DNA of 64,000 nucleotides from Octopus sinensis (lineage: Eukaryota), in NCBI RefSeq assembly GCF_006345805.1, contig NC_042999.1:85684001-85748000 (forward strand), given 5' to 3'. How positions within the stretch are numbered: the first letter of the stretch is position 1; every line of letters starts with the position of its first letter. A program made the translations under genes and the position numbers. The notes beneath the pieces are model-generated. The model saw only the letters and a list, made by a program, of their open reading frames with translations. It made no database searches and was not told the origin of the DNA. This document shows, in pieces, positions 11,673 to 60,240 of the stretch.

Positions 11673-11765
11673 TTAATAGTCTCCCGGATAAATTTTTTTA
11701 AGATGATTCAAAAGATCTTTCTGTTCAGCTTTTGGCAAAAAACTGGATCTTGCAGCATTAAAAAT
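11673..11765 (-). CDS. ADA: ADA terminal exon 9 (IFNAARSSFLPKAEQKDLLNHLKKIYPGDY*)
   Basis: ttttctag acceptor, 93 nt ending in TAA. NAARSSFLP motif typical of the ADA C-terminus. Confidence 0.94.
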   Translation of the reverse strand: MFNAARSSFLPKAEQKDLLNHLKKIYPGDY

Positions 11766-11861
11766 CTAGAAAATAAAAAATGGAAGTATTGTATTAATGA
11801 AACAGAACAAATCTGAATGGAATAACTGAAATGAAAAACTAATAATTCTGTTATTGGTTGT

Positions 11862-12840
11862 ATCATCATCATCACCATTGTTTAACGTCCGTTTTCCATG
11901 CTAGCATGGGTTGGAGTGTTTGACTGAGGTCTGGAGATGGTTTGACTGAGGTCTGCACCAGGCTCCAATCTCATCTGGCAATGTTTCTACAGCTGGATGC
12001 TCTTCTTAATGCCAACCACTTCGAGAGTATAGTGAGTGCTTTTTACATGTCACCAGCATAGGAGCCAGTCAGGTGGGCCTGGCATCAACCATGTTTGGAT
12101 AGTGCTTATTATGTGCCACCAGTACGGGAGCCAGTCAGGGGGTACTGGCATCGGGCATGTTTAGATGGTGCTTTTTATGTGCCACTGACATCGACCATGT
12201 TCGGATGATGCATTTTACATGCCACCAGAACGGGAGCCAGTCAGGAGGCACTGGCCACAGCTAAGATTTTGGTTTTATTTGACTCAACAGGTCTTCTCAA
12301 GCATATTATATCGCCCGACGCATCAAGGGTACTTTTAAATGGGCCAGACATGCAACACTGGCTGCAATCTCTCTTTAGTTGCCAGGTCTTCTCAATCACA
12401 GCATATCTCCAAAGGTCTCAGTCGTCTGTCATTGCCTCTGTGAGGCCCAATGTTCAAAGGTCATGCTTCACCTCATCCAATGTCTTCCTGGGTCTACCTC
12501 TTCCACAGGTTCCTTCCACAGTTAGGGTGTGGCACTTTCTCACACAGCTGTCCTCATCCATACATAACACATGACCATACCAGCTCAGTCATCTCTCTTG
12601 TACACCACATTTGATGCTTCTTATGTCCAACTTTACTTTCAGGGTGCTCACACACTGTTGTGTATGCACACCGACATTACACATCCAGGGGATTATACTA
12701 GCTTCATTTCTGTCAAGCCTACACATTGCTTCAGCAGTCGAGACCCATGTTTCACTGCTGTGTAGCTTGTCAGTTTGCACACATGCATCATACAGTCTAC
12801 CTTTCATCCTGTGTAAGAGGCCCTTAGTTGCCAGCAGAGG
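11862..12840 (-). mobile_element. Degenerate RTE LINE 3' fragment in the last ADA intron
   Basis: (GAT)n tail, acgttaaac terminus, and C-terminal ORF relic KGRLYDACV...SETW matching the RTE at 57214. Confidence 0.9.
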
Positions 12841-13396
12841 TAGAGAAAAAAATTGTTGATAAAAACTAGAATAATAATCATTCTACCCAAGCAATTAAAA
12901 TTTTGTTATTTCAGTAGATTAGCATTTAAACGAGTGTTATGGTCATACAAATAGTGTCATTTGTTTTCAATTTTCTGTGAAAACATTTCCGGTTACAGGG
13001 AAATATCACCTTACTTGGAGACAAGTGAAAATTTGTGATGGGAAGAGCATCTGGCTATAGAAAATTTGTCTCAATAAATTCTGTCTGACCCATAAAAGCT
13101 TGGAAAAGATGACGTTAAGACAATGATGATGAAATATTCTATCACCATAAAATGGTTAATTTGAACAAATTGTCAAAGCATGAATAGAACAGGAAAAAAA
13201 ATTGCTATATTAAAAAAAAAAAGGAGGTAATATTGCAAACTACAGAAATTATCATAATCAGTCTTTTAAATATAACAAAATTTAATTCATTTGAAAATAA
13301 TCCACCCGTTATATTTATTATTTTTCTCAAGTACTTAACTGTATATATAATAAGTATTGGGAAATATAAATAAAAGCAAAGACTAAGCATACTTAC

Positions 13397-13523
13397 AGTC
13401 TTTATAATCTGATCTTTGCTAAAACCAGCTTTTTCTGCCATGGCATAGTCATTGTGAAGACAGGTAGCAAAGACTGTGGGATCATCAGTGTTCAAAGAGA
13501 AATTAGCATCATCTTTTAAAAAC
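13397..13523 (-). CDS. ADA: ADA exon 8 (FLKDDANFSLNTDDP...QIIKT)
   Basis: ttttttaaag acceptor, gtaagt donor, 127 nt. SLNTDDP motif with the zinc-binding and substrate-binding aspartates. Confidence 0.97.
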
Positions 13524-13676
13524 CTTTAAAAAAGATAATTTTAATTTTGAGAATTCAAGAGATATTCTTGCAGAATACATTATGCTGGTTAAAAATAGGA
13601 TAAAAAGAAAAGGAAGTTAATAGCAACCAAAAGAGAAATTGTACATCAGTTTGAAGAAAAAGAGAAAACAGCTTAC

Positions 13677-13846
13677 GTAGTAACTGGATGATTTTGTATT
13701 TCTCCTAAGAATGCCTGTGTCCTGAAGCTTGAAACTAGGCAAGTCTCTAAGTGAATGTTATCATTCCTTATTTGTTTGTAAAGATGATCATCCTCAATAA
13801 CATGGTAACCATGGCCTACACGTTCAGCAAACATATCATCTACAGC
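13677..13846 (-). CDS. ADA: ADA exon 7 (AVDDMFAERVGHGYH...HLETCLVSS...NHPVT)
   Basis: ttttcttcctctag acceptor, gtaagc donor, 170 nt. ERVGHG motif. Confidence 0.95.
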
Positions 13847-13901
13847 CTAGAGGAAGAAAATGAAGTTTTAAAACTGATTAACCTTCATTTCAAATATAAG
13901 A

Positions 13902-14527
13902 AAGGAATTCAACGCCCATAAAGAAATATTACTGGATAAAGACCTCAATGTTACTAAATAATTTTTGTTACTTTTTAGGTAATAATTCTTCTTTATTTAA
14001 GCTTAAAATCAGCAATTTTGAGGGGAGGGGGAAAATTGGTTACATCAACCCCCAGCAACTGACTGATACTTTATTTTGTCAGCCCTAAAAGGATGAAAGA
14101 CAAAGCTGAACTCAGAATGTAAAGAGCCCAAAGAAATGCCACTCACAAATCTGTCAGCTTGTTACCTTACTTTTCAGGTAATAAGGTCTATTCTACAGCA
14201 ACGATATAAAATTGTACTAAATAGTTATTAACTTTGGTTTGTTGCAGTTGTGATACAACTTCCAGAGCCAATGCAAGCTAAAGCTTGGTTGTTTCTGATG
14301 TATTTTGGCATTCTATTATATCAGATTTAAAATGTGCATGATAGGGCTGACAAAATAAAGTATCAGTCAGTTGCTGGGGGTTGATGTAACCAATTTTTCC
14401 CCTCCCCTCAAAATTGCTGACTTTAAGCTTAAATAAAGAAGAATTATTACCTAAAAAGTAACAAAAATTATTTAGTAACATTGAGGTCTTTATCCAGTAA
14501 TATTTCTTTATGGGCGTTGAATTCCTT
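13902..14527. repeat. Inverted repeat: 186-bp arms (13902-14087 and 14342-14527), 254-bp spacer
   Basis: The arms are reverse complements with 2 mismatches by hand count. Confidence 0.95.
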
Positions 14528-15317
14528 GAATAGCTCCACAAAATCAATGCTTTCTTTGTCCTAGTTGTGTCATTATTTTTCTAATTATGAATGTAACAAT
14601 AGCTTTTATTTGTTTAAAAAGAAGAAAAAAAATCCTTTTTTGAGCCTAACACTTGCTTCTTTCCCAAATATTAAAAGAGAAAGCTGAAGATGAAGCATTT
14701 GGCAAAACAAGTTGGCAAACTAATTTAAATGATCATTTTCACTTCCTTATTTGAATTATATTATAAAACATGCATAGAGCATAATGAATTTGAAAATCAA
14801 AAGCATTTATTTTTTCAATGAGTTTGTTATCTTGTGTTTAAGTACCACAAAAATAAACTAAATAATTCTTATTTCAGCTATATACTTGTATTGAACCTCT
14901 TCTGATAAAGAGCAAACAATATTTATGGTGTGTCAGTGATGTGAACTTATGGATGAATTTGATCTACAGCCAAATTAATTTAATTGAACTCTCTATGAAT
15001 CAGAGGTTAGTATGCAGCTATATCAACAGGTGCACCAAATCGCAAACAGTTCTCATAGTGGCCATTACAACAACTAACACAGCTCAGTGGTGACACGTGT
15101 AACCCACATACTATGAAATAGTGGTTACAGACAGCCATCACATATAGATTAAAACAGTTTTTATCAATTTATTTAGAAAATATGAAAGTCAATGTAAAAT
15201 ATGCTAAGGGTCATAGTTTACTGAAAGGGTTCATAAAATATTGAGATAAATTAAAAATCAAAATTTTGAAGAAAAAAGAAAAAAAATTCTATTAAAATTT
15301 CAAAAGGAAAACTTTAC

Positions 15318-15389
15318 CTCTTTAACATTAGGAGGTCCTCCAATTTCTCCAGCATGTGCTGTACGATGAATTCCTAGCTTATGGGCTTC
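15318..15389 (-). CDS. ADA: ADA exon 6 (EAHKLGIHRTAHAGEIGGPPNVKE)
   Basis: ttttattcaag acceptor, gtaaag donor, 72 nt, phase 0-0. HAGE supplies a zinc His and the catalytic Glu. Confidence 0.97.
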
Positions 15390-15954
15390 CTTGAATAAAA
15401 AGTAAATAAGATCTTCATATATTGTGCCATATCTAGAAATGAAGTGCTTTTGTTTCAAAAGTATTTTATATTGCAGATTATGTTATTTTAATGAAATGAA
15501 ACTGTGCGTAGGTAAATAAAATACCTTTTAACTCAACTTAAATGAAATAGACATTCTCAATGCACAGTTGTCAATATTAAAATTAATCAACTTATTTGTT
15601 GTTTATTCAAAGCTTGTAAGATTTTATGTATAGTTCAGGATTGAGACAGATGCTATGCAATTTGATTTTCTTCAGGCAGACAAAGTTAAGCAAGAAATTT
15701 ACAGATTTTGCAAGTTATAAAACTGTAATGGCAGCCTGCTAAAAAGAGGATAAGTTCATGTGCTTTGAAGAGATATGAGGGAATTATGTTTTAGAAGATC
15801 ATCATTTAAAGAAAAAATGCAAAAAACAGATCAAGTATCAACTATTAATCTTATTTTCAATAGGATTAATAGACATGTATGCGTGTCTACAAATGACAAT
15901 AGAGAAATTTAATCCAGGATGAAAATATAAATAATATGAGAAATTATTACAAAC

Positions 15955-16073
15955 CTTGAAAACATCTCTAATTTCAGTTGGAGTGGGGAAGAACTCTGCA
16001 CCTGCCACATCTATTCCAACAACACCATCATTTTTAAACTCATTACACAGCTGAAGTACGTCTTTAGCAATTT
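15955..16073 (-). CDS. ADA: ADA exon 5 (IAKDVLQLC...GIDVAGAE...DVFK)
   Basis: ttgtag acceptor, gtttgt donor, 119 nt. Contains GVVGIDVAG (the DLAGDE motif region). Confidence 0.93.
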
Positions 16074-16529
16074 CTACAAATATTCCCATAGACACATGTA
16101 TGAGTGTGCATTCTTTGTATGTATGTGTATATATATATATATATGGATGTTCATGTACACACGGACACTTTATTAATATGATTGTTTTGAAACATTTCCC
16201 CACAAAGCTCTCTCAATAAAATCTCACTTATTTTGCAGTTCTTCAAGAGAGCACATTCAAAGCCAGTTCTGAACTTCCTTAAGATTTCCTCAAAGATATG
16301 TGTGACAGATAAATAAATGAATAAATAAAAAACCCAAAGAACATTAGTAAATTCTATCCCAGGGTCTCTTTCAAAATATTCTTTCAATTCTCTGGTGAAG
16401 TTATGGCTTCGAGTATGTTACACTGTTAGACTCCATTTACTCAACCAAATTACAAATATTAGTTTGAATATAGTTATGAAGCAGGCTTAGGTCATTTACA
16501 AAACTAATGCAAAAAACATCTGCTGACTT

Positions 16530-16916
16530 TGGCTGTGTGGTAAGTAGCTTGTTTACAAACCACATGGTTCCGCGTTCAGTCCCACTGCGTGGCACCATGG
16601 GCAAGTCTCTTCTACTATAGCCTTGGGCCGACCAAAGCCTTGTGGGTGGATTTGGTAGACAGAAACTGAAAGAAGCCTGTCGTATATATGTGCGTGTATA
16701 TATGTGTGTGTGTCTGTGCATGTTTGTGTATCTGTGTTTGTCCCCCCGACATTGCTTGACAACCGATGCTGGTGTGTTTGCGTCCCCGTAACTTGGCGGT
16801 TCGGCGGAGGAGACCGATAGAATAAGTACTAGGCATACAAGACTAAAAAATAAGACTAAAGGTGGTGCTCCAGCATGGCCAGTCAAATGACTGAAACAAG
16901 TAAAAGAGTAAAGAGA
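16530..16916 (+). mobile_element. SINE family A, full length
   Basis: A-box-like TGGCTGTGTGGTAAG, B-box-like GGTTCCGCGTTCAGTCCC, internal (TG)n, tail aagtaaaagagtaaaga. Confidence 0.9.
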
Positions 16917-17650
16917 AAGTATACTAAACAAAGAAATATACCTTAATTCAAAGGATAGTATACAATGAGGCTAGATTGGTAGCTTACAATCATAGACTAT
17001 ACAATCAAAGAGACATTATTGCTTTGTCCTACCAGTAAAGCTTTCATGTGCAAAAGAAACATTTCTATTGCTAGCTGAAACTCAGAGGAAGACAAGGGCA
17101 AAGTAGAAGTGAGAAATCGAGAGACAAACTACTACTTGGGTCATGTTTTCTAAAAAACCCTAGAATATATTCTAATAAATTAAACCAACATATTTCAGAT
17201 TAAAGCAGTAACAATAAGCATCTAATTGTCAATCAAACCACAAGCTTGATATGACCCTGAATTTACTTTATGTCATAGTGTAAATTGCACCTACAATTAA
17301 ATTGCCTAATTATTTTTTAGCATTAAAACCTAACCTTACTTAAATATCCAATAAAATTATTAGTAAACTCAAACAGTAAATCCTTTCTATTACTTATTTT
17401 GCCAAATCTTACAACCTGTACTGCAATATTCACAAATTCAAAATTAAACTCAAAACTTGCCAGTCTTCATGTATAAGTAACTCTTCATAAGTAACTCTAC
17501 AAACCTTAACTGAAACATTCAGATAATCTTATTAGCATCCTTACTACTTCTGCTAGCCTCCAAATCTTTCAGGTAAACTTTATAAAATAAACATTAAAAA
17601 AACCTATTATTTACATTAGATGGATATTTGTCCTCATCTTGTTTGTTGTT

Positions 17651-17696
17651 AACACAACGTTTTGGCTGATATACTCTCCAACCTTCTTCAGGTGTC
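17651..17696 (-). ncRNA. Type I minimal hammerhead ribozyme motif with G12A core change
   Basis: gacac-CUGAAGA-aggttg...cagcc-AAAA-cgtt-gtgtt: stem I GACAC/GUGUU, stem II, palindromic AACGUU stem III. The core GAAA reads AAAA. Confidence 0.7.
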
Positions 17697-17776
17697 TTGG
17701 GGAAATTTCGAACCTGGGTTCTCATTCCTAAGGTATTTTTCGATGTTATTAGTATTATTCCACCCACTTCACAGAA

Positions 17777-18960
17777 TTGATCAAGGATACTCCCACTGAA
17801 TCCAACCAGATGGTGAGTCTAGATGTGATAAGCCTGTTCACCGAAGTCCCAACTGGTGAAGCACTATCAATGATACAAGAAAAACTAGTGACAGACACCC
17901 ATCTAAAAGAACGCACTAGTATATCAATAAGAAACTTGATGGAAATGTTGACCTTCTGTGTAGAGACTACCTACATCAGTATGGACACTGATACATATTG
18001 ACAAGAGGAGGGTTTAGTTATGGGTTTGCCATTATCACCAGTAATAGCCAATATATACATGGAATACTTTGAGAATTTGGCTCTAGGATCAACACCGCTA
18101 AAACCAACACTATGGCTACGATATTTTGATGACACCTTTATACTCTGGCCCCACCAGGAAGATGTCCAAGTGCTGTTAGATCATGTGAACTCAATAAAGC
18201 CATCCATACAGTTCACAATGGAAAAGGAAAAAGACAATAACATGCACCAAGTATGGATTCAGGACATCTGGATACCGCAAGCCGAATTTACTGGAAGATA
18301 CCTCAACTTCAATTCCCACCATCCATACAGTGTAAAGAGAGGGATTGCTCAGTGCCTAAAACATCATACAAAGAATATAAGTAGCGATCATGATACACAC
18401 CACGAAGAAATGATGAAGCTCAATAATGACCTGTTATGCAACAACTAACCCAAAAGTATGCTATACACTCCAATTATGAAGAAGAGAAAGGATGAGGCCA
18501 ATAAACTGTCCACAGTCTGTCTACCCTATGTGAAAGGCTTCTCTGAAAAGATACAAAAGATATGCGGCCCATATGACATCAGGACAGTATTCAAGAGTAA
18601 TACAACACTTCGCAAATATCTCCTTCGAGTAAAACCACCAATAGAAGAGAATATGACCAAAGACTGTGTGTACTCCATCCCATGCAGCTGTGGTAGGTTA
18701 TACAAAGGCGAAACATGCCGCCTCCTCAAAATAAGGATAGAGGAACATCACAAAGCTGTGACACAAGGAGATATTGATAAATCAGGTATAGCTGATCATG
18801 TATGGAAAAATGGAGACCCCCACTGTGGGATGATGTTAAAATAATAGACAGAGAACATCACTGGAAAATATGAAAACTAAAAGAAGCAGCACATATGCTA
18901 GGACACAACAACCTCCTAAGCAGACCAAGTGCAGATATGAGCAGCATATGGGAACTCGTA
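17777..18960 (+). pseudogene. Disrupted PLE reverse transcriptase + GIY-YIG ORF
   Basis: Three consecutive ORF-track pieces (17777, 18020, 18458) broken by stops and frameshifts. Confidence 0.9.
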
Positions 18961-19023
18961 TTAAGGAAGGATAGAAAAATATTAGATTTATAAGCCCTAA
19001 AATTCACTCCATACTTGCCCACA

Positions 19024-19092
19024 GGCATATGGTGTAGTGGTTAAGAGTGTGGGCTACTAACCCCAAGATTCCGAGTTCGATTCCAAGCAGTG
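19024..19092 (+). mobile_element. tRNA-like head (A and B boxes) upstream of the hammerhead-bearing repeat
   Basis: TGGTGTAGTGGTTAAG and GAGTTCGATTCC with tRNA-like spacing. The stems are imperfect, so it is not a functional tRNA. Confidence 0.7.
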
Positions 19093-19166
19093 ACCTGAAC
19101 AATAACAATAATAATAACATCGAAAAATACCTTAGGAATGAGAACCCAGGTTTGAAATTTCCCCAA

Positions 19167-19209
19167 GACACCTGAAGAAGGCTGGAGAGTATATCAGCCA
19201 AAATGTGTT
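19167..19209 (+). ncRNA. Hammerhead ribozyme motif, degenerate (G12A and 3-nt stem III deletion)
   Basis: gacac-CTGAAGA-aggctg-gagagtatat-cagcc-AAAA-tgtgtt. Confidence 0.6.
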
Positions 19210-19558
19210 AACAAACAAGATGAGGACAAATATCCATCAAATGTAAATAATATACATAATTCCTCATCTCTTAAATATAGAACTGTATTAATAAACCTAT
19301 AATCTGGACCAAAAATACCATCTATGTATCTACAAATGCCACTTAGCTGCCTAAGTAAACATAACTTTTTTCCTTTTTCATAAATCACTAAAGAAACTGA
19401 ATTCATAAGATGTTAAGAATAAGTCAGCTAATAAAGAATTTCAACTGCTCCTATCACCTAAGAGTGCCTCTAATTTGCCTTAACATTTTACTCTCAAATG
19501 AAACGTATACATTAACTCATTGTAATTTATACAAGACATAAAGTTCTCTTATATTTAA

Positions 19559-19776
19559 CTTTTTAGCATTTAAACTGGCCATATCCAGCCTAAATATTTT
19601 ACCTGTTTTATCCTGAAACTGACCAAATGTGACCTCTTACACCTGCCCTACAATGTCATTCTAAAAATAAGTGATCACATCATCAAAATCTTGAAGCTAC
19701 AAGATAATACATGATTAATGTAAAACAATGTGAATAAATAAACAACATTTGATGAAGTAATCAGAATGCTAAAGGA
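19559..19776. mobile_element. piggyBac-type MITE, diverged copy
   Basis: TTAA on both sides; ends CTTTTTAGCATT / AATGCTAAAGGA. Confidence 0.8.
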
Positions 19777-21037
19777 TTAATTATATACATGCCATACACT
19801 AGATCTATTAGATGGTGACTCCATACACTAGATATATTCAAATATTCCCCTGCCTCAACCAGTTTTAAATCTAAATCAGTATATCATCAACTCCATTTAA
19901 TGTCCGATCGCCATGCTGGCATGGGTTGGACGGTTGGACATGGAGCTAGCTAGCAGGGAACAGACCAGACTCCAACTGTCTGTGGCAGCATAGTTTCCGT
20001 GGCTGGATGCTTTTCCTAATGCCAAGAATACAGTATAGAAAATCATTGGGTGAATTATCCTCACATGCCTATTTTTTTTTTCTTTTTCAAAATTTCCATT
20101 GCTCTTCAATAAACTAACTCTAGAACTTTGGCAAATAGCTGAAGGATATCTAACAAAAACTGCTCTAATCACACTAAACATTTCATTAACTAAAATCACT
20201 ATTTGTCTCTTCATACTTTACTTTGCTTTGCTCCAGATATTATAAATCTAGTTTTATGAGGTGTCTTGCGTAACTTAGGTTTCCAAAAATGTGTAAGAAT
20301 GCAATAATTCTTCTCCACAGTGACCAGTTAAAATTTATAAATCACACAATGATTTAGCAATTTAAATTTTAAATCTCAGCTATACAGCAAATTCATAAGT
20401 GACATTATACAAAATACATAACATGTGTGTATGTGTGATGGGTGCATGCATGTGTGATGGGTGCAGGAATTGCTGAGTAGTTAAGAAGTTCACTTGGTCT
20501 TATACTTGAGCCAAAAAAAGCTTTGTAAGGCAGAAACTGAAACAAAGTAACCTGTCATGCTTATGTGTGTTCATATATCTCCTTGTCATGAGATATTGCA
20601 TGATAGTTGTAAATGAGCATCACTGTCAAACAAGTGGTGCATTTGGTTTCAATCTTCTATTGAAACATGTCTGGCCACAGGGAAATATTACCTTACTTGG
20701 AAACAGGTGAGAGCTGGCAAATCAATTGTAGAAAATGTGCCTCAACAAATTCTGTCAAGCATGGAAAAGTTCACAATAAAATGATATAGGGCAGGCGTGG
20801 GGGGGGGGGGGACAAGTTAAAACTCAACTATTAAACTATCAAATGTTTATGTCATTGAGTGTCCCATTGTAAAGCTTATTCAGAGTAATCTTAATATTTT
20901 GTAGCTGAAAATTGAAATCTAAAGAAATACTTTAAGGTAAAAGGAACATCTTAGATATTCATAATGTAACAAGTAGTGAATATCATAAAAATGAAAGAAG
21001 CATTCAACACATTTGATAGGCATTTCATATATTATTA

Positions 21038-21560
21038 TTGGATTGTCTGGAAAGTTCATGCCGATTTTTAAAGGAAAGAAAAAGGTCAGTAAATACTTGC
21101 CATTACATTTTTAATCAACCATTTTGTTGCACAATGCATCTCCATCTTTCCTTTAACTTGAAAATACCCTCATCCCAGAATTGAGGTGGTTTCATGGCAA
21201 AGAATTCATCAAGGTATCTTTTTATGTCATCCAAGCAATTGAAATTTTTACCATTAAGACTATTCTGAAGAGACCTGAATAAGTGGAAATCCAAAGGAGC
21301 AATATCTGGTGAATATGGAGGGTGGGGTAACACATCCCAGCTGAGCCGCAGCAATTTTTGTCTGGTTCCCAAAGCATCAAGTGCTGAAAGTGAACTTTCT
21401 TATTAAAGGGTTACAGAATTAACACAGGTTATAGGAACATAAACCTTCTTCCATGAAAAGATAGGTGTAGTCAAATCCTATTTTATGGACTCAACCATGT
21501 TCTAAAATAAGTTAAAAGGTAAGCTACTATAAATCGGCACAAACTTTCCAGACAACCCAA
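21038..21560 (-). mobile_element. Mariner deletion derivative, 523 bp
   Basis: ~26-bp TIRs (ttggattgtctggaaagttcatgccg / cggcacaaactttccagacaacccaa), TA TSDs, and C-terminal transposase relic PHPPYSPDIAPLDFHLF. Confidence 0.92.
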
Positions 21561-21657
21561 TATTTATTAATAACAATCTTGATTCAGCTTCATGCAACCT
21601 AAAGTTTCATAGGTTCATCATCCAAACTCCAAAAAGAAATTTGTAAATTGTACTTAC

Positions 21658-21881
21658 TAGGTATGTTTCTCATACAACACAAGATAGCCTTAATTATTAT
21701 TTTATGTTCTGCACAGCTTGTTTTTAATGCATCTAAAACAATTTTCACAACATCTCTTGCAGATAAGTTTTCATCTGCAAGAATATGAGGGGCAAACCGT
21801 ACTTCTGCATAGTAAATATTTTGTTTAGCACTATCTTCACAAAAATCTTTTGCTATTTGTGCAATAGCTTGTTTGTCACCT
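21658..21881 (-). CDS. ADA: ADA exon 4 (GDKQAIAQIAKDFCED...EVRFAPH...ILCCMRNIP)
   Basis: ttttcag acceptor, gtaagt donor, 224 nt open frame. Motifs EVRFAPH (RYSPH-like) and ILCCMR. Confidence 0.95.
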
Positions 21882-22112
21882 CTGAAAAAGAAATAAAAAA
21901 TAGATGTTATGACAAAGCTTATTTAAAGTTCTGTAGCAAATCTTTATCGCTCTTTATTTCTGTTAACTGTTTCATGATGTTTCACAAATATTTTTCAATG
22001 AAAACATAATAAATCCACTGGTGCCTTATCCCTTTTTCATAAACATGGTACTCAAGTTAAAACAATCAGTGCAAAATTATTTAATAAATTATACCAAGAA
22101 ATATGTTCTTAC

Positions 22113-22235
22113 TTTATAATTGGCAGGAAGTAACCAAATATATCCAACATGGCTCCTAAACCTTCATTTTTACTCTCTGTAACCCTCTCTCTTAACTCTT
22201 CTACTGTTTTCTCTTTCAGTTCTATGTTCCTTCGC
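22113..22235 (-). CDS. ADA: ADA exon 3 (RRNIELKEKTVEEL...FGYFLPII/K)
   Basis: attag acceptor, gtaag donor, 123 nt, phase 2-2. Aligns by eye to the RRGIALPANTAEGL...FDYYMPAIA segment of ADA. Confidence 0.92.
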
Positions 22236-27590: not shown

Positions 27591-27652
27591 TTGGCTGTTT
27601 CAAATAATGTCTCTGGTCGAATTGCTCCATCCAAATGAACATGTAGTTCTAC
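27591..27652 (-). CDS. ADA: ADA exon 2 (VELHVHLDGAIRPETLFETA/K)
   Basis: ttgcag acceptor, gtaag donor, 62 nt. Contains the HxH zinc ligands and the HLDG motif of ADA1-type deaminases. Confidence 0.96.
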
Positions 27653-43987: not shown

Positions 43988-45060
43988 AAAAATCCATAAA
44001 AAAAGTAAAAGGGACGGAAGATACAAACCGAACTCATAGCAGATAAGTCTGCTAAGACTATCTGAAAGACAAAAATACACATCCAATACAAAAGACATAA
44101 AAACACATACATACAGGTAAGCACGCATATATGCATACACGCACTCAATACACGATAGTCTCTCGTAATCCGAGAAAGACGGTTCTGCAATTTCTTGCTG
44201 AACAACTCACAAATGACTTGTTTATAATCATCAGATGTTTGTGTTGTACATTAGCTCACGCTGTTCATCAAATTGACGTTGCCTGAACGGTGTACCGCGC
44301 GTCATCTGTCGAAGTGATCTAATAAACAACGTGAGATGAAGTGTTTTACTCAAGAACACAACACACCACGATCTCGCGAAGTACAACACTAACAAAGCCA
44401 CGCACCCTCAACACAGACAACCAGATACATAAATAGATATACATCCATGTAGTGATAAAACAAAACCAATAGACAGAGTACATATAAACGTACATGTATG
44501 AACACACGCACACATTTTATATATATATTTCTATATCCATATCTACACACAACAGGCACATACATTCATGCACACTATGGTATCTATGGTGCGGGGAAAG
44601 GTTTCCTCTTGTCTAGAAACAATTTCTAGAGACGTTAGTTTTGACATTCAAAGAGAAGTACGGGCCGTAACAAAGCATCTGGCTTCTCTTCCGCTTACCC
44701 CCGGAGTGGGCTATTTTGCCTATGGGGTGGAAGATGGGGGAAGGTCCTTGATTTACTACCCAAAGGGTTATGTTCTGGGTGTTAACTCGTACTGATGGAA
44801 GCGGGACTACGGTCCATTAACCCAATCTCTCCGCAATTAACAAGCCAGAGAATCCCGTGGGACCTGATGGGTCACGTTTTCGTCCCGCTAAAGATTTCAC
44901 TGTCAATGGTGAAGAGTCCGTATCCCCACCAACTGTTTGGGTTGGCAGCGGAGTTACCCGATCTGCGTTGGATAGACAAATGTTCCTTACAATCCCACTA
45001 CAAGTACTCTCGGTTCCTATACAATCTTTAAGGTCTAGTTCTGGACCTTAAAGATTGTAT

Positions 45061-45325
45061 TTCTGGGATAAACTTAATACTGTCTTTATCAACAGCTCCC
45101 ATGAGAGCCTCATAATACTCTGCATTATTGTAAAATATACGACCAAGGCTGAAAGGCTGGAGATTCTAACTGATATTTCTTACCAAGACATTGATGACGT
45201 ATCTAGGATAGCATGATTGCCTATGAACGTAATGGAGGCTCTCTTTATTATATAGAAAATAGTCCCGAATCCTAATCTAAAGTGATGTCAAGAAAGTTAA
45301 CCCTTCTACTGCAATTCAAAGCAGA
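45061..45325 (-). mobile_element. Penelope-like RT thumb relic
   Basis: RVNFLDITLD followed by a segment homologous to 46255-46530. Confidence 0.7.
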
Positions 45326-45688: not shown

Positions 45689-46098
45689 CAAAAAATTTCA
45701 CAGAATTTAAATGTTAAAATAAACTAATGAGTTACTTAAATTATATATAACTCAGTTAAGTTAGAAAACAAGTTTTAAAAACCTTTTTATGGGGGTACAG
45801 GTACCTATTACTGAGAAGAAATAGTATTTTACGTAAAAGTACAATGAGTTTCGTTAAGAAAAAGTATTGTCATATTTTTGTAACTTTCTGTGAAAAAAAA
45901 CCGGCTTCCAAAACGAAAGAAAAATAAATTATATTAATATATATGGCTCGTACGTGAAACAAGTCATCTGAAAGGAAAACAAAGACAAGACTTGTATTCG
46001 CGAAATTAAGTAATTAAAATTTAGCTTACTTTGGCAGGAAAATTATTACTATCCATGACACTGGATGCGACGGTTTAGAAATTTATTTGTTGACAAGT
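45689..46098. repeat. Direct duplication copy 1 (ADA exon 1 + first ~340 nt of intron 1 + short 5' flank)
   Basis: About 97% identical to 48232-48669 apart from indels (hand count). Confidence 0.95.
46030..46056 (-). CDS. ADA: Adenosine deaminase first coding exon, proximal copy (MDSNNFPAK)
   Basis: Minus strand reads gtgtc-ATG GAT AGT AAT AAT TTT CCT GCC AAA|gtaagc. Same peptide as the distal copy with one synonymous change; phase 0. Confidence 0.72.
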
Positions 46099-46103
46099 CA
46101 GGG

Positions 46104-46216
46104 GGAAAATCTGCGTGTGTGTGTGCGCGCGCACACACGCGCTCACACATACACGTACACACTCACTTACATGCACGCGCGCGTGCACACGCACGCACAC
46201 ACACACACACACACAC
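46104..46216. repeat. Alternating purine-pyrimidine (TG/CG/CA)n tract
   Basis: tgcgtgtgtgtgtgcgcgcgcacacacgcgc...; potential Z-DNA former. Confidence 0.85.
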
Positions 46217-46254
46217 TTACAAACATACGCGTACACAAGGCGTATCTTTCCTTG

Positions 46255-46530
46255 ACAAATGCAGTTAGAAGGGTTAACTTTCTCGACTTTACTTGAGATT
46301 TAGACTCAGGATTTGTATTTTCCGTACCCCAAAGTTTCCATTACCGTTCACAAGCAATCCTATCACCATAGATACGTCATCAATGGATTGGTTTGGAAAA
46401 TTTATAAGGATCTCCAATCATTCAGCCAATGAACATATATTCTACAATAATGCGGAATATTATAAGGAGGCTCTCAGAGGAGGAGATTATAGAGTCAGTA
46501 TTAAGTTTATCCCAGAAACCAAGCTAAATT
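46255..46530 (+). mobile_element. Penelope-like RT thumb relic
   Basis: RVNFLDFT and ISNHSANEHIFYNNAEYYKEAL..GDY, resembling the thumb region of PLE RTs. Confidence 0.7.
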
Positions 46531-48231
46531 TGGCCCTCAAAGATCATACAAACATTAAAGATCCTTGTGGTCCCGAGACGGGGGAGGAACCTTAAATCTA
46601 CACGACGTAGATTGTCAAAAAGAAAGGCTTCCCCCACATCGGAAAATGTGGGATACAAAAAATTTGGTAAAAAAACGGGTGACAGGGAACTGAAATTCTG
46701 ATAATGCTTTTTTATTTTCTTTTTACGTGACAAAATCGTAATCTCCCGTTGTTGATCGCAAGAAGGAAAGGGAGTAGTGTGAATGTTCAACACCTTAGAA
46801 ATTTGGCTGTTGTTTCTAGCATGTGGAGAGACCACGTCTATGAACTGGTTGGAAATGACTCATGGCATGATTGTGCACGAAATGGGGTGCAGTGGGGGCA
46901 ACTATTTTTTTTCCCATTAATATCGAAAGTTTGAAATGCTGATTTGGGGGGGGGGGGCATAATTGGAATATTCGTTACCGAAAACATCGGAATCTGAAGA
47001 AAATAAGAAAACTGAATGGGGAATTCAATAACTGAATTTGTGAAAATATTTTGATATACACTTATATATATCAACAGTTATATTCGAATAGTTTTACTTT
47101 AGGTGTCATGGGACTATACTTGTTAGAAGAGGGGAAGGAATACATGTAATTAATTTTATAAGCAGCCTATTGACCGAGTTTCGCTCGAGTGTGTGAAAAT
47201 TTTTAAAGAATTGAAGTTTTGTAGAATTTCTTTCTGTTTATCAGAATAACAAGCCCCAATATTTAGAACACAGAAGTAAAAACTTATAACCAGTTATTGT
47301 ATTCCAAAATAACGGAGAGTTGACAAAAGAAATGAAAAAATATCAAAGCATTTTTAACTCGTAAACCGTAACCATCTACGCTTTTAAAATCCGAAGAAAT
47401 GAAAAAAACATAAGTGTATCTCTCGGGTGGTGACATCCCTAATCTACACCAAATTTTCGTGAAAAAAATTTAAAAAATAAAGTGAGAAATGAAGTTACAG
47501 CTGATTGTGTTCTTCAATACGGAGGAGGTGGGAAACGAAACATGAAAAAAAGTTTAAATTTTGAGCTTTCCAAATTCTAAACACATAGAAATTCGATAAA
47601 TTATAATAAAGAAATCTTATGTAATATCTGTATATCTACGTGTGTGTGTGTGTGTGCTGAAAATGTTTAGAAGGTCCTTTGATTGTAAACCTGCAGTTGA
47701 AGAAATGGTAAAGTTGGGGTGAACTCGTAAAACTTTACCGAAATAGTTACCGATCACCAGATTCTTTACTTGTAACAATGGATAATTAAAGTATCAACAT
47801 ATCATTGTAATTAAATGATATACGAAGACTCTCGCATCATCTTGTCTTCTTTCACAGTTTCTTTTTAGCAAGTTCTGCGACTATTGAAAAGAAGCAGAAT
47901 ATGTAAACTTAAGTCTACAGCTCCGAATCTGCACGAATTGGCAGCGCGAGTCTTTTTACAACGTATATAACAAGATGGTTATCGTTTCACACACACTCAA
48001 ATTAAATATTTTATAGAAGTAACAGTGACATAAGGGCCAAGAGTTAAATGCATTGACACCTCAGGGAACTCTCGGTCCTTACGTCACTGTACTTCTGCCA
48101 AATATTAACGAAAGCACACAGACACAGGTGTATGTGTGTGTACGTATGTATGTTTAAGTCAAAAAGTTCAATAAACACGCCGCTTGTTAGCCTCCACAAA
48201 TATGCTCTATGTGATGTAACATTTCAACGAT

Positions 48232-48669
48232 CAAAAAATTTCACAGAATTTAAATGTTAAAATAAACTAATGAGTTACTTAAATTATATATAACTCAGTT
48301 AAGTTAGAAAACAAGTTTTAAAAACCTTTTTATGTGGTACGGGTACCTATTACTGAGAAGAAATAGTATTTTACGTAAAAGTACAATGAGTTTCGTTAAG
48401 AAAAAGTATTGTCATATTTTTGTAACTTTCTGTGAAAAAAAACCGGCTTCCATAACGAAAGAAAAATAAATTATATTAATATATATGGCTCGTACGTGAA
48501 ACAAGTCATCTGAAAGGAAAACAAAGACAAGGCTTGTTTTCACGAACTTAAGTAATAACAATTTAGCTTACTTTAGCAGGAAAATTATTACTATCCATGA
48601 TGTTGTGATGTCACTGGATGCGAATATCAGCAATTGCACTAGTGTTTAGAAATATATTTGTTGACAAGT
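48232..48669. repeat. Direct duplication copy 2
   Basis: As copy 1, plus two indels (~11 and ~18 bp) in the 5' UTR part. Confidence 0.95.
48572..48598 (-). CDS. ADA: Adenosine deaminase first coding exon, distal copy (MDSNNFPAK)
   Basis: Minus strand reads acatc-ATG GAT AGT AAT AAT TTT CCT GCT AAA|gtaagc. Strong donor, phase 0, joins in frame to VELHVHLDG, as the short first exon of vertebrate ADA does. Confidence 0.72.
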
Positions 48670-48690
48670 AGGCGGGAAAGTGGGTCATCT
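48599..48690 (-). promoter_or_regulatory. Candidate 5' UTR/promoter of the distal ADA first exon, with a GC-box/E2F-like TTTCCCGCC motif
   Basis: Immediately upstream of the ATG, within the CpG-rich domain; plus strand aggcgggaaa at ~48670-48679. Confidence 0.4.
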
Positions 48691-49329
48691 CATTATCTAT
48701 CTAATATTAAACTCTTTCATTTTCGTGCCGAGCAACATATCACGTTACCATAACATTCTATACAAGGTATGACACAAAATCTACCAAGCAAACTGGTGGT
48801 TGTCTATCTGCATCAACAAAAGTTAATTAATAAAAAAAAAGTTTGTGGATAAACATAAAATACAGTAGTTTGTTCAGCAAGCCTCTCTACTTTATTTTTA
48901 TCTACGAACTTTTATGGAAATAGCGGAATAAAAACAAATGACAACTTTACAGATAACTTTTCACAAGAACCACTTAATATATTGGGAACTTAAGCGTCAA
49001 ATGTTTAAGTTTGGGTTAATATACACTTAACAATCGTAAAAAAGTCACAGTAACATGTATTGAGAGAATGAAATTTAAAAAATACTTAGAAAATGAAAAT
49101 GAATTGACAGAAATCAGAAGCGATGACTCTGATTTAAGGGCTGTGTAGAACGTACATATATTTATTAAACATAAAAACCTTACATATATTTTATATGAGA
49201 TGGACGGGCAGAAGTCTTTCCGAAAACAATTGCATTCAGACAGAAACAACTCACTGATGCACAAATGAGATTCGTGAATAGCTTCTCTTGATCTCTAAAT
49301 TCGTTTCGCTACACATGCATATGAAGATA

Positions 49330-57213: not shown

Positions 57214-60021
57214 CTAGTCTTGCCGGGTCTTCTCACGCACAGCATACTTCCATAGGTCTCGGTCTCTGGTCATTTCCATGGTGAGACCTAACGTTCGAAG
57301 GTTGTGCTTCACCACCTCGTCCCAGGTTTTCCTGGGTCTACCTCTTCCACGGGTTCCCTCAACTGCTAGGGATTGGCACTTTCTCACACACCTATCTTCA
57401 TCCATTCTCGCCACATGACCATACCATCGCAATCGTCTCTCTTGCACGCAACAACTGATGCTTCTTAGGTACAACATTTCTCTTAGGGAACTAACACTCT
57501 GTCGAGTAAGTACACTGACATTACACATCCATCGGAGCATACTGGCTTCATTCCTCATGAGCTTACGCATGTCCTCAGCAGTCACGGCCCATGTTTCACT
57601 GCCATGTAGCATGGCAGTTCGAACACATGCATCATACAGTCTGCCCTTTACTCTGAGCGAGAGGCCTTTAGTCACCAGCAGAGGTAAGAGCTCCCTAAAC
57701 TTTGCCCAGGCTATTCTTATTCTAGCAGTTACACTCTCAGCGCACCCACCCCCACTACTGACTTGGTCACCTAGATAACGGAAGCTATCAACTACTTCTA
57801 ATTTTTCCCCCTGGAAAGTGACGGAAGTTGTTTTCTGCAGATTTTCGGAGGTCAATGCTCCCGAGCATCTGCCACATATAAAGACTATCTTCCCAGTTAG
57901 CCTACCTTTGACATTGCTGCACCTCTTATGTGTCCATAGCTTACACTGGGTACATCTTATAGAGTTTCTACCTACACCTTTTCTACAGATCGAGCAGGGC
58001 CATCTTCCTGAGGACATTTGTGGATTGCCTACCTTTCTACTTATTAGTACTTTGGTTTTAGCTAGGTTGACTCTAAGGCCCCTCGATTCTAAACCCTCCT
58101 TCCACACCTGGAACTTCTCCTCCAGTTCTGATAGTGACTCAGCAATTAGAGCGAGGTCGTCAGCATAGAGGAGCTCCCAGGGGCAACCTGTCGTGAATTC
58201 CTCTGTTATTGCCTGGAGGACTATGATAAATAGGATGGGGCTGAGTACTGAACCCTGGTGGACCCCAACCTCTACTTTGAATTCTTCTGTGTACATGTTG
58301 CCAACCCTAACCTTGCTTACGGCATCTCTGTACATGGCTTGCACAGCCCTCACCAGCCATTCATCTATCCCTAGTTTCCTCATTGACCACCAGATGAGGG
58401 ATCGGGGGACCCTAACAAAGGCTTTCTCCATGTCAACGAAAGCCAGGTACAGGGGCTTATCTTTGGCTAGGTATTTCTCCTGCAGCTGCCTTACCAGGAA
58501 TATAGCATCAGTGGTGCTTTTCCCTGGCACAAACCCAAACTGCATCTCATCTAAACTAACTCTCTCTCTAATTAGTTGGGCTATGACCCTCTCCGTAACC
58601 TTCATTACCTGATCCAACAGCTTGATACCTCTGTAATTATTTGTATCTAGGGCATCACCTTTACCTTTGTAGCAGTTGACTAGTATGCTGCTACACCAGT
58701 CATTGGGTATGACTCCTTCGTGTATCACCTGGTTGACTATACGGGTGACTAGGTTGTAGCCGACACTGCCAGATATTTTGAGCATCTCTGCATTAATACC
58801 CGATGGGCCTGGGGCTTTCCCTGTCTTCATGCTTCTAATTGCCTTAGCTACCACGGAACTATCAACTTGGATAGCTGGTCCCTCTGTTGGGTCAACATTC
58901 GGCAGACTCTCTTTATCCCATTCATTTTCTTTATTCAGCAACCTTTCATAGTGGCATCTCCAAACCTCTCTCTTTGCATCCTCATTTAGCGCAAGTGAAC
59001 CATCATCCATGCGAACACACTTCTCTCCTACCACATCACGATTCTCTCTCACACACTGTCTTGCAACACGAAATACCTCAAGTCTTTCATCCTCACGGCG
59101 CAGAACATTGGCAAATTTTTTCTTATCCGCTTCCCCTCTGGCTAAATAAACCTGTCTCCTAGCTTCCCTTCTGGCTGTCTGATACAATTCCCTGCTACCA
59201 CCGTTCTTCCAGTCCTTCCAAGCCTGTCTCTTTTGTCTAATAGCCCTGTCAACCACAGTGTTCCACCACCATGTCACTCTGGGTTGAGATGGTACTTTGC
59301 TCCATCCACAGATCTGGTCAGTGGCTGTCAGCAGATTGTCCCGTAGAAATCTCCAGTTGTCTTCCACATTAAGTGAAGCTATATCCCCTTCTATTTCGTC
59401 AAAGGCTTCGAGTAGTATGTCTCTAAATTTCTGTCCATTTGCAGGATCTTTAAGCTTCCAGACCCTTCTCCTCCAAGCAGGTCTTCTTCTGGGCAACCAT
59501 TTAGCTCTGATCCTGAAGTCGCTAACTACTAATCTATGTTGAGGAGTGCATTCTTCGCCTGGAAAGGTTTTGGCATTTATAATCAGCCCTCTTTCCCTTT
59601 TTCTGGCAAGGATGTAGTCGATCTGGCTGGTGTGTCTGCCAGAACGGTAGGTGACTAGGTGAGAGGAAAGTTTCCTGAAGTTGGTATTGCAGACCATAAG
59701 GTCATTTGCATCGCAGAACTCCAGCAGCCTGGTTCCCTCCTCATTACGAGAGCCGAAACCGTAGCCTCCATGGATGCCATGGAAGCCCCCAACATGCCGT
59801 CCGACATGTCCATTGAAATCACCTGCCACGAAGAGAAGGTCACTGTCATTTGTCAACGAGGTAGTTCGCAATAGGGTGTCATAGAATTGGTCTTTTTGTC
59901 CTTCCGGTAGCCCTGGTTGAGGGGCATATGCCGAGATGATGGTAACTGTCCTGTGATGAAGAACTAATCTAATTTTAATTACTCTGTCACTTACTCTGAC
60001 TACCTCAATTACCTTACCTAC
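57214..60021 (-). CDS. RTE ORF: partial AP endonuclease + reverse transcriptase + PHD-type finger, N-terminally truncated
   Basis: The frame stays open upstream of the track's 59871 start (KVIEVVRVSDR...SAYAPQ). Motifs GDFNGH, SQIDY, QHRLV, NYRGIKLL, QFGF, FVDMEKAF, GVHQGSVLSP, YADD, FRYLG. Confidence 0.93.
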   Translation of the reverse strand, partial: VGKVIEVVRVSDRVIKIRLVLHHRTVTIISAYAPQPGLPEGQKDQFYDTLLRTTSLTNDSDLLFVAGDFNGHVGRHVGGFHGIHGGYGFGSRNEEGTRLLEFCDANDLMVCNTNFRKLSSHLVTYRSGRHTSQIDYILARKRERGLIINAKTFPGEECTPQHRLVVSDFRIRAKWLPRRRPAWRRRVWKLKDPANGQKFRDILLEAFDEIEGDIASLNVEDNWRFLRDNLLTATDQICGWSKVPSQPRVTWWWNTVVDRAIRQKRQAWKDWKNGGSRELYQTARREARRQVYLARGEADKKKFANVLRREDERLEVFRVARQCVRENRDVVGEKCVRMDDGSLALNEDAKREVWRCHYERLLNKENEWDKESLPNVDPTEGPAIQVDSSVVAKAIRSMKTGKAPGPSGINAEMLKISGSVGYNLVTRIVNQVIHEGVIPNDWCSSILVNCYKGKGDALDTNNYRGIKLLDQVMKVTERVIAQLIRERVSLDEMQFGFVPGKSTTDAIFLVRQLQEKYLAKDKPLYLAFVDMEKAFVRVPRSLIWWSMRKLGIDEWLVRAVQAMYRDAVSKVRVGNMYTEEFKVEVGVHQGSVLSPILFIIVLQAITEEFTTGCPWELLYADDLALIAESLSELEEKFQVWKEGLESRGLRVNLAKTKVLISRKVGNPQMSSGRWPCSICRKGVGRNSIRCTQCKLWTHKRCSNVKGRLTGKIVFICGRCSGALTSENLQKTTSVTFQGEKLEVVDSFRYLGDQVSSGGGCAESVTARIRIAWAKFRELLPLLVTKGLSLRVKGRLYDACVRTAMLHGSETWAVTAEDMRKLMRNEASMLRWMCNVSVLTRQSVSSLREMLYLRSISCCVQERRLRWYGHVARMDEDRCVRKCQSLAVEGTRGRGRPRKTWDEVVKHNLRTLGLTMEMTRDRDLWKYAVREKTRQD

Positions 60022-60240
60022 TTCAGGTTTGTTTATCCTTCTTCTTCAAAGAAGTTCAAAGAACTAGGGTTCCTTCATTCCCAGTAGTTCACATGCTAGT
60101 TAATCCATAGCTTGGATCCTACTCCATGTCAGAGTAGACCTGGAAACAAAAGTGGGTAAAAGGTGGTTCCACACTCCTCAAAACTCTGGAACTCATGAAC
60201 CAGAGCCCCAGCACCAGTTTAAAGTCATACCTAGGATATA

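What the first reader, a model, noticed from the sequence alone, without database searches (positions are those of the whole stretch)
45689..48669. Duplicated first coding exon of ADA: two intact starts 2.5 kb apart
Seen: a ~410/440-bp duplication copies the ATG exon, its GTAAGC donor and ~340 nt of intron 1. Both copies encode MDSNNFPAK; the only exonic change is synonymous (GCC/GCT) and both donors are intact. The deep-intron part is ~99% identical, while substitutions and two indels cluster in and around the 5' UTR. Homology stops ~40-70 nt upstream of the ATG, so each copy has different upstream DNA: a GC-box/E2F-like motif for the distal copy and a (CG/CA)n tract for the proximal copy. 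Inference: a recent birth of alternative promoters or first exons giving the same enzyme under two regulatory inputs, with the synonymous SNP as a built-in tag.
Basis: partly seen in the sequence, partly recalled or inferred. Interest (0 to 1): 0.8.

Follow-up and report, generated by a model that had tools for sequence, protein, structure and literature searches.

The report
Old tandem copy of ADA's first exon
The octopus adenosine deaminase gene really has two intact copies of its start exon 2.5 kb apart, but they come from an old 2.4-kb tandem duplication patched by gene conversion, and whether the second copy is used as a start is still unproven.

Summary
On the minus strand, 45689-46109 and 48232-48680 are the only two copies of this segment in the 2.72-Gb genome (Octopus sinensis). 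Each has ATG, MDSNNFPAK and an AAA|gtaagc donor. Spliced to exon 2 at 27652, either gives exactly the 338-aa RefSeq ADA.

It is not an assembly artefact. The independent O. vulgaris assembly has both copies 2546 bp apart, with 10 copy-specific substitutions shared by the two species.

The interpretation needs four corrections.
- **Size:** the 440 bp is what remains of a ~2.4-kb tandem duplication, complete in O. vulgaris. Homology ends at 45689 because O. sinensis lost 3.1 kb there.
- **Age:** it is not recent. Unconverted parts differ by 7.8%, about the distance to O. bimaculoides (8-10%) and 15 times the sinensis-vulgaris distance (0.5%).
- **The 99% stretch:** this is a gene-conversion tract, at least 700 bp long in O. 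vulgaris.
- **The GCC/GCT tag:** it exists only in O. sinensis.

The distal copy keeps the ancestral 5' flank. The proximal copy keeps 53 nt of it and lost an upstream block conserved with Argonauta. The O. vulgaris annotation starts a coding sequence at each copy, but I found no transcript evidence. This is an ordinary kind of event, of modest interest.

The parts
48572..48598 (-). Distal first coding exon of ADA (ATG...GCT AAA, MDSNNFPAK), followed by donor gtaagc at 48571-48566
   Evidence: Spliced to 27652, it gives exactly P0122 (XP_029634326.1 / XP_029634327.1).
48599..48700 (-). Ancestral 5' flank of the distal exon. It holds blocks conserved in O. bimaculoides and Argonauta: ATGACCCA (48688-48681, outside the duplication), CTTGTCAACAA (48668-48658) and TCGCATCCAGTG. 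The E2F-like TTTCCCGC (48679-48672) is shared with O. bimaculoides only.
   Evidence: Six-sequence alignment. L009 is colinear with the distal copy and its upstream DNA at 88%.
48232..48680 (-). Distal copy of the duplicated segment as seen in O. sinensis: 82 nt of 5' flank, the exon, and 340 nt of intron
46257..48231 (-). Rest of duplication unit 1. This is intron-1-derived DNA, orthologous to O. bimaculoides intron 1. Its paralogue follows the proximal exon in O. vulgaris but is deleted in O. sinensis.
   Evidence: window 48679-47584 and 47024-46257 match L007:9949-11876 at 91-93%
46110..46256 (.). Duplication junction: about 150 bp of filler made mostly of a (CG/CA)n microsatellite, CpG observed/expected 1.3-1.4. 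It lies directly upstream of the proximal copy.
46030..46056 (-). Proximal first-exon copy (ATG...GCC AAA, MDSNNFPAK), followed by donor gtaagc at 46029-46024
   Evidence: The O. vulgaris annotation starts a coding sequence at the orthologous site, L007:10001.
46057..46109 (-). The 53 nt of ancestral 5' flank kept by the proximal copy. CTTGTCAACAA and GTCGCATCCAGTG are retained. The E2F-like motif is mutated. The copy is 18 nt and 11 nt shorter than the distal one.
45689..45989 (-). Gene-conversion tract in the proximal copy; its partner is distal 48232-48531. There are no copy-specific fixed differences here. In O. vulgaris the tract continues for at least 700 bp.
   Evidence: K between copies 0.002, against 0.057 to O. 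bimaculoides
45689..45702 (.). Scar of a 3139-bp deletion in O. sinensis relative to O. vulgaris (L007:10368-13506), with TG/TTG microhomology. This is what ends the repeat on the intron side.
   Evidence: The missing DNA has no close (about 99%) counterpart elsewhere in the O. sinensis assembly.
27591..27652 (-). ADA exon 2 (VELHVHLDGAIRPETLFETAK), the common acceptor for either first exon
11673..22235 (-). ADA coding exons 3-9: 22235-22113, 21881-21658, 16073-15955, 15389-15318, 13846-13677, 13523-13397, 11765-11673
   Evidence: Exact spliced model with GT-AG introns; Pfam PF00962 hits

Best explanation
**Shown.** A tandem segmental duplication of about 2.4 kb copied the 5' end of the octopus adenosine deaminase gene. 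The copied piece held roughly 55-80 nt of proximal promoter and 5' UTR, the 27-nt ATG exon, its donor and about 2 kb of intron 1. The new copy was placed 2.5 kb downstream, with a (CG/CA)n filler at the junction. The event predates the O. sinensis / O. vulgaris split and is about as old as the split from O. bimaculoides. Later, gene conversion made at least 700 bp of the intron part nearly identical in the two units. O. sinensis then deleted 3.1 kb right after the proximal copy. The distal copy keeps the ancestral upstream DNA.

**Inferred.** The distal exon is the main, ancestral start. The proximal copy still has two of the three conserved 5' blocks, an unchanged ATG (purine at -3) and an identical donor. 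It lies within reach of the same upstream elements. It therefore probably works as a second, minor transcription start whose first exon splices to the same exon 2 (27652). The resulting mRNA would encode the same enzyme with a 5' UTR about 29 nt shorter. The confidence given is for this functional claim; the structural history I hold at about 0.9.
For: **Structure**
- Only two copies exist in the genome.
- The independent ONT-based O. vulgaris assembly has both copies. Ten copy-specific substitutions are shared by the two species.
- In O. vulgaris the units align over L007:7374-9798 and 9949-11876.
- O. bimaculoides is colinear with the distal copy and its flank.
- Argonauta has a single exon 1.

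**Age and conversion**
- K between copies is 0.078 in the unconverted parts and 0.002 in the tract. K to O. bimaculoides is 0.08-0.10. K between sinensis and vulgaris orthologues is 0.005.

**Use of both starts**
- Either exon gives exactly the RefSeq protein.
- The O. vulgaris annotation has two coding-sequence starts 2546 bp apart. Its alternative forms were added by PASA from RNA-seq and Iso-Seq assemblies (PMC10700109).
- The O. sinensis protein carries two RefSeq accessions for one sequence.
- Conserved blocks are retained in the proximal flank.
Against: - I obtained no transcript or TSS data. No Logan fragment covers the N-terminus.
- The proximal copy lacks the ATGACCCA block conserved from Argonauta to Octopus. 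It also lacks the E2F-like motif shared with O. bimaculoides.
- In O. vulgaris the two exons plus 2 nt upstream are identical. Junction reads with a short overhang map equally well to both donors, so they could have created a spurious second isoform (my inference about the mappers).
- Intactness of a 27-nt exon says little. At about 5% divergence per lineage, a neutral copy would usually stay intact, and gene conversion from the distal copy can keep it so.
- In O. sinensis the exon block shows 3 differences in 65 sites, close to the background rate.
Confidence: 0.5

Rival explanations
1. The duplication is real and has the same history, but the proximal copy is a silent relic. It sits inside intron 1 of transcripts that all start at the distal promoter, has no working promoter, and is removed with the intron. 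Its intactness is due to its small size and to gene conversion from the functional distal copy. The second annotated isoform would then be a mapping or annotation artefact.
For: - The proximal copy lost the upstream conserved block and the E2F-like motif, and its 5' flank is truncated and shortened.
- There is no sign of selective constraint on the exon block in O. sinensis.
- The identical 29 nt in O. vulgaris make junction reads ambiguous.
- No transcript fragment was found.
Against: - Two independent annotations appear to model two transcripts that encode the same protein.
- Two conserved 5' blocks and the ATG context survive.
- CpG is not depleted in the DNA directly upstream.
Confidence: 0.42
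2. Assembly artefact: two haplotypes, or a collapsed or expanded repeat, were laid in tandem, so the animal has one first exon.
For: - The O. sinensis assembly is a 2019-20 PacBio/Hi-C draft with 13,516 scaffolds.
- The copies are partly 99% identical.
Against: - The same two-copy arrangement, with 10 shared copy-specific substitutions and the same indels, is in an independent ONT/10x/Omni-C assembly of another species.
- Each copy has different flanks and there is no gap between them; the only N run in the window is at 31209-31308.
- Divergence of 8-9% outside the converted tract is far above allelic levels.
Confidence: 0.02
3. A young duplication: it arose shortly before the sinensis/vulgaris split, the 99% intron identity reflects its true age, and the 5' part then evolved fast.
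For: - The 9-nt SNN insertion and a 6-nt intron deletion are shared by both copies and absent from O. bimaculoides.
- The 175-900 tract is nearly identical in the two copies.
Against: - In O. vulgaris the rest of the unit (477 clean sites) differs by 7.8% between copies. That equals the distance to O. bimaculoides and is 15 times the sinensis-vulgaris distance.
- The sharp mosaic of 0.2% against 8-9% is the signature of conversion, not of rate variation.
- The converted tract is not specially conserved against O. bimaculoides (5.7%).
- The proximal 5' UTR has Argonauta-like spacing, whereas the distal copy and O. bimaculoides share 18 extra nt.
Confidence: 0.06

Closest known systems
Clusters of tandem variable first exons, each with its own promoter, spliced to common downstream exons (UGT1, GCNT2, clustered protocadherins: PMC1885805, PMC3325998; chelicerate sDscam 5' cassettes: PMC4835542; abstracts seen)
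   Same: First exons arose by tandem duplication. Each carries its own donor and (part of) its own upstream DNA, and all join one common acceptor. Gene conversion between the repeated units is discussed for these clusters.
   Different: There are only two units here. The exon is 27 nt and encodes the same nine residues in both, so no protein diversity results. Promoter activity of the second unit is unproven.
Genes with several alternative first exons and promoters that yield one protein, such as the untranslated exon-1 variants of NR3C1, CYP19A1 and NOS1 (from my own knowledge, not checked here)
   Same: The only possible outcome is regulatory: one protein, with different 5' UTRs and promoters.
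   Different: In those genes the alternative first exons are non-coding, unrelated in sequence, and the ATG lies in the shared exon 2. Here the ATG itself is duplicated and the two exons are paralogues.
Animal ADA1-type adenosine deaminase genes (Pfam PF00962)
   Same: The gene is a clear orthologue: 338 aa, HVHLDG at the start of exon 2, and a short ATG exon ending in ...PAK before VELHVHLDG, as in other cephalopods.
   Different: Argonauta and, as assembled, O. bimaculoides have a single exon 1. The second copy is specific to the O. sinensis / O. vulgaris lineage, or was lost or left unassembled in O. bimaculoides.

Membership tests
Genuine tandem segmental duplication (not an artefact) | Two direct copies in one contig with no gap, unique in the genome | tested here: met
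   The only N run in the window is at 31209-31308.
Genuine tandem segmental duplication (not an artefact) | Present in an independently sequenced and assembled genome, with shared copy-specific differences | tested here: met
   O. vulgaris L007:7374-7822 and 9949-10367; 10 paralogue-fixed substitutions and the same 18-nt and 11-nt indels
Genuine tandem segmental duplication (not an artefact) | Single-copy state in an outgroup | tested here: inconclusive
   Argonauta hians has a single copy. O. bimaculoides has one exon 1, but it also has N gaps at L009:5092-7098 and 11905-13384 and a stray partial copy of the intron piece.
Alternative first exons with separate promoters (UGT1 / protocadherin type organisation) | Each first exon has its own 5' splice site and joins a common acceptor in frame | tested here: met
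   Both copies read AAA|gtaagc. Either one spliced to 27652 gives the exact 338-aa protein.
Alternative first exons with separate promoters (UGT1 / protocadherin type organisation) | Each first exon is preceded by its own functional promoter | tested here: inconclusive
   The proximal copy keeps CTTGTCAACAA and TCGCATCCAGTG but lacks ATGACCCA and the E2F-like motif. No promoter assay or TSS data.
Alternative first exons with separate promoters (UGT1 / protocadherin type organisation) | Transcripts from each first exon are observed | not testable with these tools
   Indirect evidence only: two coding-sequence starts in the PASA-updated O. vulgaris annotation, and two RefSeq accessions for one O. 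sinensis protein. No Logan fragments.
Alternative first exons with separate promoters (UGT1 / protocadherin type organisation) | The variable exons encode different protein segments | tested here: not met
   Both encode MDSNNFPAK. The locus therefore resembles these clusters in organisation only.
Gene conversion between duplicated units | Sharp mosaic of near-identity and high divergence between the copies | tested here: met
   K between copies is 0.092 (alignment columns 20-175), 0.002 (175-900) and 0.078 (900-2559).
Gene conversion between duplicated units | The near-identical tract is not explained by strong constraint (it has normal divergence to an outgroup) | tested here: met
   K to O. 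bimaculoides in the tract is 0.057-0.059, against 0.08-0.10 elsewhere. No Rfam family matches in the window.
Adenosine deaminase, PF00962 | Pfam A_deaminase match above the cut-off and orthology to annotated ADA | tested here: met
   Exon hits of 50.3 and 49 bits against a cut-off of 27. The best hits are octopus ADA proteins.

The most novel reading that the evidence does not exclude
Both starts are used and have been kept for about 30 million years: a housekeeping-type purine enzyme gene that split its regulation between two paralogous core promoters. Gene conversion would keep the nine-codon exon and its donor identical while the 5' UTRs and upstream DNA diverge. This would be regulatory subfunctionalisation inside a single gene, traceable across Octopus species.
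Probability: 0.2. Interest if true: 0.4.

Novelty: new member of a known kind. Interest (0 to 1): 0.25.

Why it matters
If both starts are used, this is a small, datable example of how a second promoter and first exon can arise by tandem duplication without changing the protein. It would also show how gene conversion keeps the coding part uniform. O. sinensis, O. vulgaris and O. bimaculoides offer three natural states to compare: a truncated second unit, a full second unit, and a single or rearranged copy.

In practice it is also a warning for annotation and RNA-seq quantification. The two exons are identical over 29 nt in O. vulgaris and differ at one base in O. sinensis, so junction reads can be assigned to the wrong one. 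Nothing here suggests a new mechanism or any change in ADA function.

Tried and rejected
- **Dispersed repeat or transposon as the source of the repeat:** rejected. Only two copies exist in 2.72 Gb.
- **Haplotype or assembly artefact:** rejected through the O. vulgaris assembly.
- **True exon 1 elsewhere:** rejected. Orthologues share the ...FPAK | VELHVHLDG junction, and the exact spliced model reproduces the RefSeq protein.
- **Transcript evidence from Logan assemblies:** a search with the N-terminal 124 aa gave nothing. The exact O. sinensis protein is not on record as a contig product.
- **The 3.1 kb missing in O. sinensis placed elsewhere, for example on an unplaced haplotig:** searches found only the unit-1 paralogue at 91-94% and dispersed repeats at 70-89%.
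- **Constraint or an embedded RNA gene as the cause of the 99% tract:** there are no Rfam hits, and divergence to O. bimaculoides is normal.
- **Relative-rate test to decide whether the duplication predates the O. bimaculoides split:** the asymmetry was 35 to 16 on raw columns. It fell to 23 to 13 (p = 0.13) after removing columns near gaps, so it is not decisive.
- **Pfam on the ORF in the spacer (46278-46592):** no hit.
- **Literature search for three terms together ('alternative first exons', 'tandem duplication', 'alternative promoters'):** no paper.
Full report
**What the window is.** The window is G000:C3:85684001-85748000 of a genome with 2,719,151,902 bases in 13,516 scaffolds. These figures match those given for the Octopus sinensis assembly GCA_006345805.1 in PMC10700109. 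The gene is adenosine deaminase on the minus strand. Pfam PF00962 hits two exons above the cut-off. A spliced model with GT-AG introns reproduces, residue for residue, the 338-aa O. sinensis protein held under XP_029634326.1 and XP_029634327.1. The coding exons are:
- exon 1: 46056-46030 or 48598-48572
- exon 2: 27652-27591
- exon 3: 22235-22113
- exon 4: 21881-21658
- exon 5: 16073-15955
- exon 6: 15389-15318
- exon 7: 13846-13677
- exon 8: 13523-13397
- exon 9: 11765-11673

**The observation.** It is correct.
- The segments 45689-46109 and 48232-48680 are direct repeats. They are the only two copies in the genome.
- Both read ATG GAT AGT AAT AAT TTT CCT GC(C/T) AAA followed by GTAAGC.
- They differ by 17 substitutions and by indels of 18, 11 and 1 nt. 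All but three substitutions and the 1-nt indel lie in the 5' flank, the exon and the first 45 nt of the intron.
- Homology begins 53 nt upstream of the proximal ATG and 82 nt upstream of the distal ATG.
- Upstream of the proximal copy lies a (CG/CA)n tract at 46110-46256.
- This is the true first exon. O. bimaculoides ADA starts MDFPAK, Argonauta hians starts MATFPAK, and two Logan-derived cephalopod sequences start ...DPFPAK. Each continues with VELHVHLDG.

**Not an artefact.** The O. vulgaris genome was assembled independently from ONT, 10x and Omni-C data of another species. It has both copies 2546 bp apart (L007:7455 and 10001). Ten substitutions and both large indels are copy-specific and shared by the two species. 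The duplication therefore existed before the two species split, which the paper puts at about 2.5 My.

**The real unit is larger.** In O. vulgaris the repeat does not stop after 440 bp. L007:7374-9798 aligns with L007:9949-11876 at 91-93% outside a ~560-bp indel. About 150 bp of filler, mostly (CG/CA)n, lies between the units.

O. sinensis is colinear with O. vulgaris at 99% through both exon copies. It then lacks L007:10368-13506 (3139 bp), and the two sides join with TG/TTG microhomology at 45689-45702. The missing DNA has no close (about 99%) counterpart elsewhere in the O. sinensis assembly.

**Which copy is ancestral.** O. bimaculoides (L009) is colinear with the distal copy, its upstream flank and the following intron DNA over 4.1 kb at 88%. 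The distal copy therefore sits behind the ancestral promoter. A six-way alignment with Argonauta shows three conserved 5' blocks: ATGACCCA, CTTGTCAACAA and TCGCATC(CAGTG). The proximal copy keeps the last two. It lacks the first, which lies outside the duplication, and it has TTTCCCCC where the distal copy and O. bimaculoides have the E2F-like TTTCCCGC.

**Age and gene conversion.** I aligned the two O. vulgaris units with O. bimaculoides and dropped columns near gaps.

| Alignment region | K between the two copies | K to O. bimaculoides |
|---|---|---|
| 5' flank, exon, start of intron (columns 20-175) | 0.092 | 0.092-0.115 |
| Next ~700 bp (columns 175-900) | 0.002 | 0.057-0.059 |
| Rest of the unit (columns 900-2559) | 0.078 | 0.080-0.101 |

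- O. sinensis and O. vulgaris orthologues differ by 0.005.
- The near-identical stretch is not unusually conserved against the outgroup. No Rfam family matches anywhere in the window. It is therefore a gene-conversion tract, made around the time of the sinensis/vulgaris split.
- The unconverted parts put the duplication at about 15 times the age of that split. That is about as old as the split from O. bimaculoides, given as ~34 My in PMC10700109.
- One rare change hints that the duplication is even older. The proximal 5' UTR has the same block spacing as Argonauta, while the distal copy and O. bimaculoides share 18 extra nt.
- Against that, both copies share a 9-nt insertion (the residues SNN) and a 6-nt deletion that O. 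bimaculoides lacks. Conversion can explain this.
- A relative-rate comparison was not decisive (23 against 13 sites, p = 0.13).
- The O. bimaculoides assembly has gaps exactly where a second unit would lie, and it holds a stray 5'-truncated copy of the intron piece upstream of its exon 1. I leave the order of the duplication and the speciation open.
- 'Recent' is wrong either way.

**The GCC/GCT 'tag'.** O. bimaculoides and both O. vulgaris copies have GCC, as does the O. sinensis proximal copy. Only the O. sinensis distal copy has GCT. It is a private change, useful as a marker in that species only.

**Is the proximal copy used?** This could not be tested directly.

For use:
- The O. vulgaris annotation starts a 338-aa coding sequence at each copy. 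The paper states that alternative forms were added by PASA from RNA-seq and Iso-Seq assemblies.
- The O. sinensis protein has two RefSeq accessions for one sequence. That is what two transcript variants with different first exons would give (inference).
- The copy keeps two conserved 5' blocks, a purine at -3 and an identical donor.
- The DNA just upstream is not CpG-depleted: observed/expected 1.3-1.4, against 0.39 for the window.

Against use:
- The upstream conserved block is missing.
- In O. vulgaris the two exons plus 2 nt upstream are identical, so short-overhang junction reads could create a false second isoform (inference).
- A neutral 27-nt exon would usually stay intact anyway.
- In O. 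sinensis the exon block has 3 differences in 65 sites, close to the background rate.
- No Logan transcript fragment was found.

I put 'both used' at about 0.5 and 'silent relic' at about 0.4.

**Comparison with known systems.** In organisation, this matches the multiple-variable-first-exon clusters: first exons duplicated in tandem, each with its own donor, all joined to a common acceptor. Examples are UGT1, GCNT2 and the protocadherins (PMC1885805, PMC3325998) and chelicerate sDscam (PMC4835542). It differs in having two units only and in encoding the same peptide. Any effect would be purely regulatory, as in genes with several untranslated first exons (my own knowledge). It is a new example of a known kind of event, and public annotations already contain both starts.

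**Verdict.** The finding is real and well observed, but the story is a different one. It is an old 2.4-kb tandem duplication, later shaped by gene conversion and a lineage-specific deletion, not a recent 440-bp birth of a promoter. The functional claim remains open. Interest is modest.

Noticed in passing
window 57217-60045 (-): An uninterrupted 943-aa ORF of a non-LTR (LINE-type) retrotransposon. It has endonuclease, reverse-transcriptase (RVT_1, E 2e-30) and weak PHD-like matches. It may be a young element, about 9 kb upstream of ADA.
   Followed up: partly
window 17753-18841 (+): Reverse-transcriptase fragments (RVT_1, E 2e-9) in three adjacent broken frames, inside the ADA intron between exons 4 and 5.
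   Followed up: partly
window 45060-45323 and 46257-46518: Inverted copies (about 75% identity) of an older repeat bracket the proximal exon copy. In O. vulgaris the same element sits at L007:9537-9798 and 11610-11883 (direct) and at 13884-14147 (inverted). One copy therefore belongs to each duplication unit and one to the downstream intron.
   Followed up: partly
L007:12942-13506 (O. vulgaris; absent from the window): A ~560-bp dispersed repeat with more than 35 copies at 79-89% identity in the O. sinensis genome. It ends exactly at the right-hand breakpoint of the 3.1-kb segment that O. sinensis lacks.
   Followed up: no
L009:4592-4769 and 7139-7181 (O. bimaculoides): A 5'-truncated second copy of the intron-1 piece, 93% identical to the main O. 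bimaculoides copy. It lies upstream of the single exon 1, is split by a 2007-N gap, and is followed by 126 nt that are 92% identical to L007:12058-12183. Unexplained.
   Followed up: partly
window 31209-31308: A 100-N assembly gap inside ADA intron 1. It sits within a long purine-rich (GA-type) simple repeat that translates as runs of RE and SL.
   Followed up: no
window 48598-48572 / L009 about 10001: O. sinensis and O. vulgaris ADA have three extra residues (SNN) after Met-Asp compared with O. bimaculoides (MDFPAK). The cause is a 9-nt insertion present in both exon copies.
   Followed up: yes
window 46057-46356: CpG observed/expected is 1.3-1.4 upstream of the proximal ATG, in a window that is otherwise CpG-depleted (0.39). 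The figure upstream of the distal ATG is 0.59.
   Followed up: no
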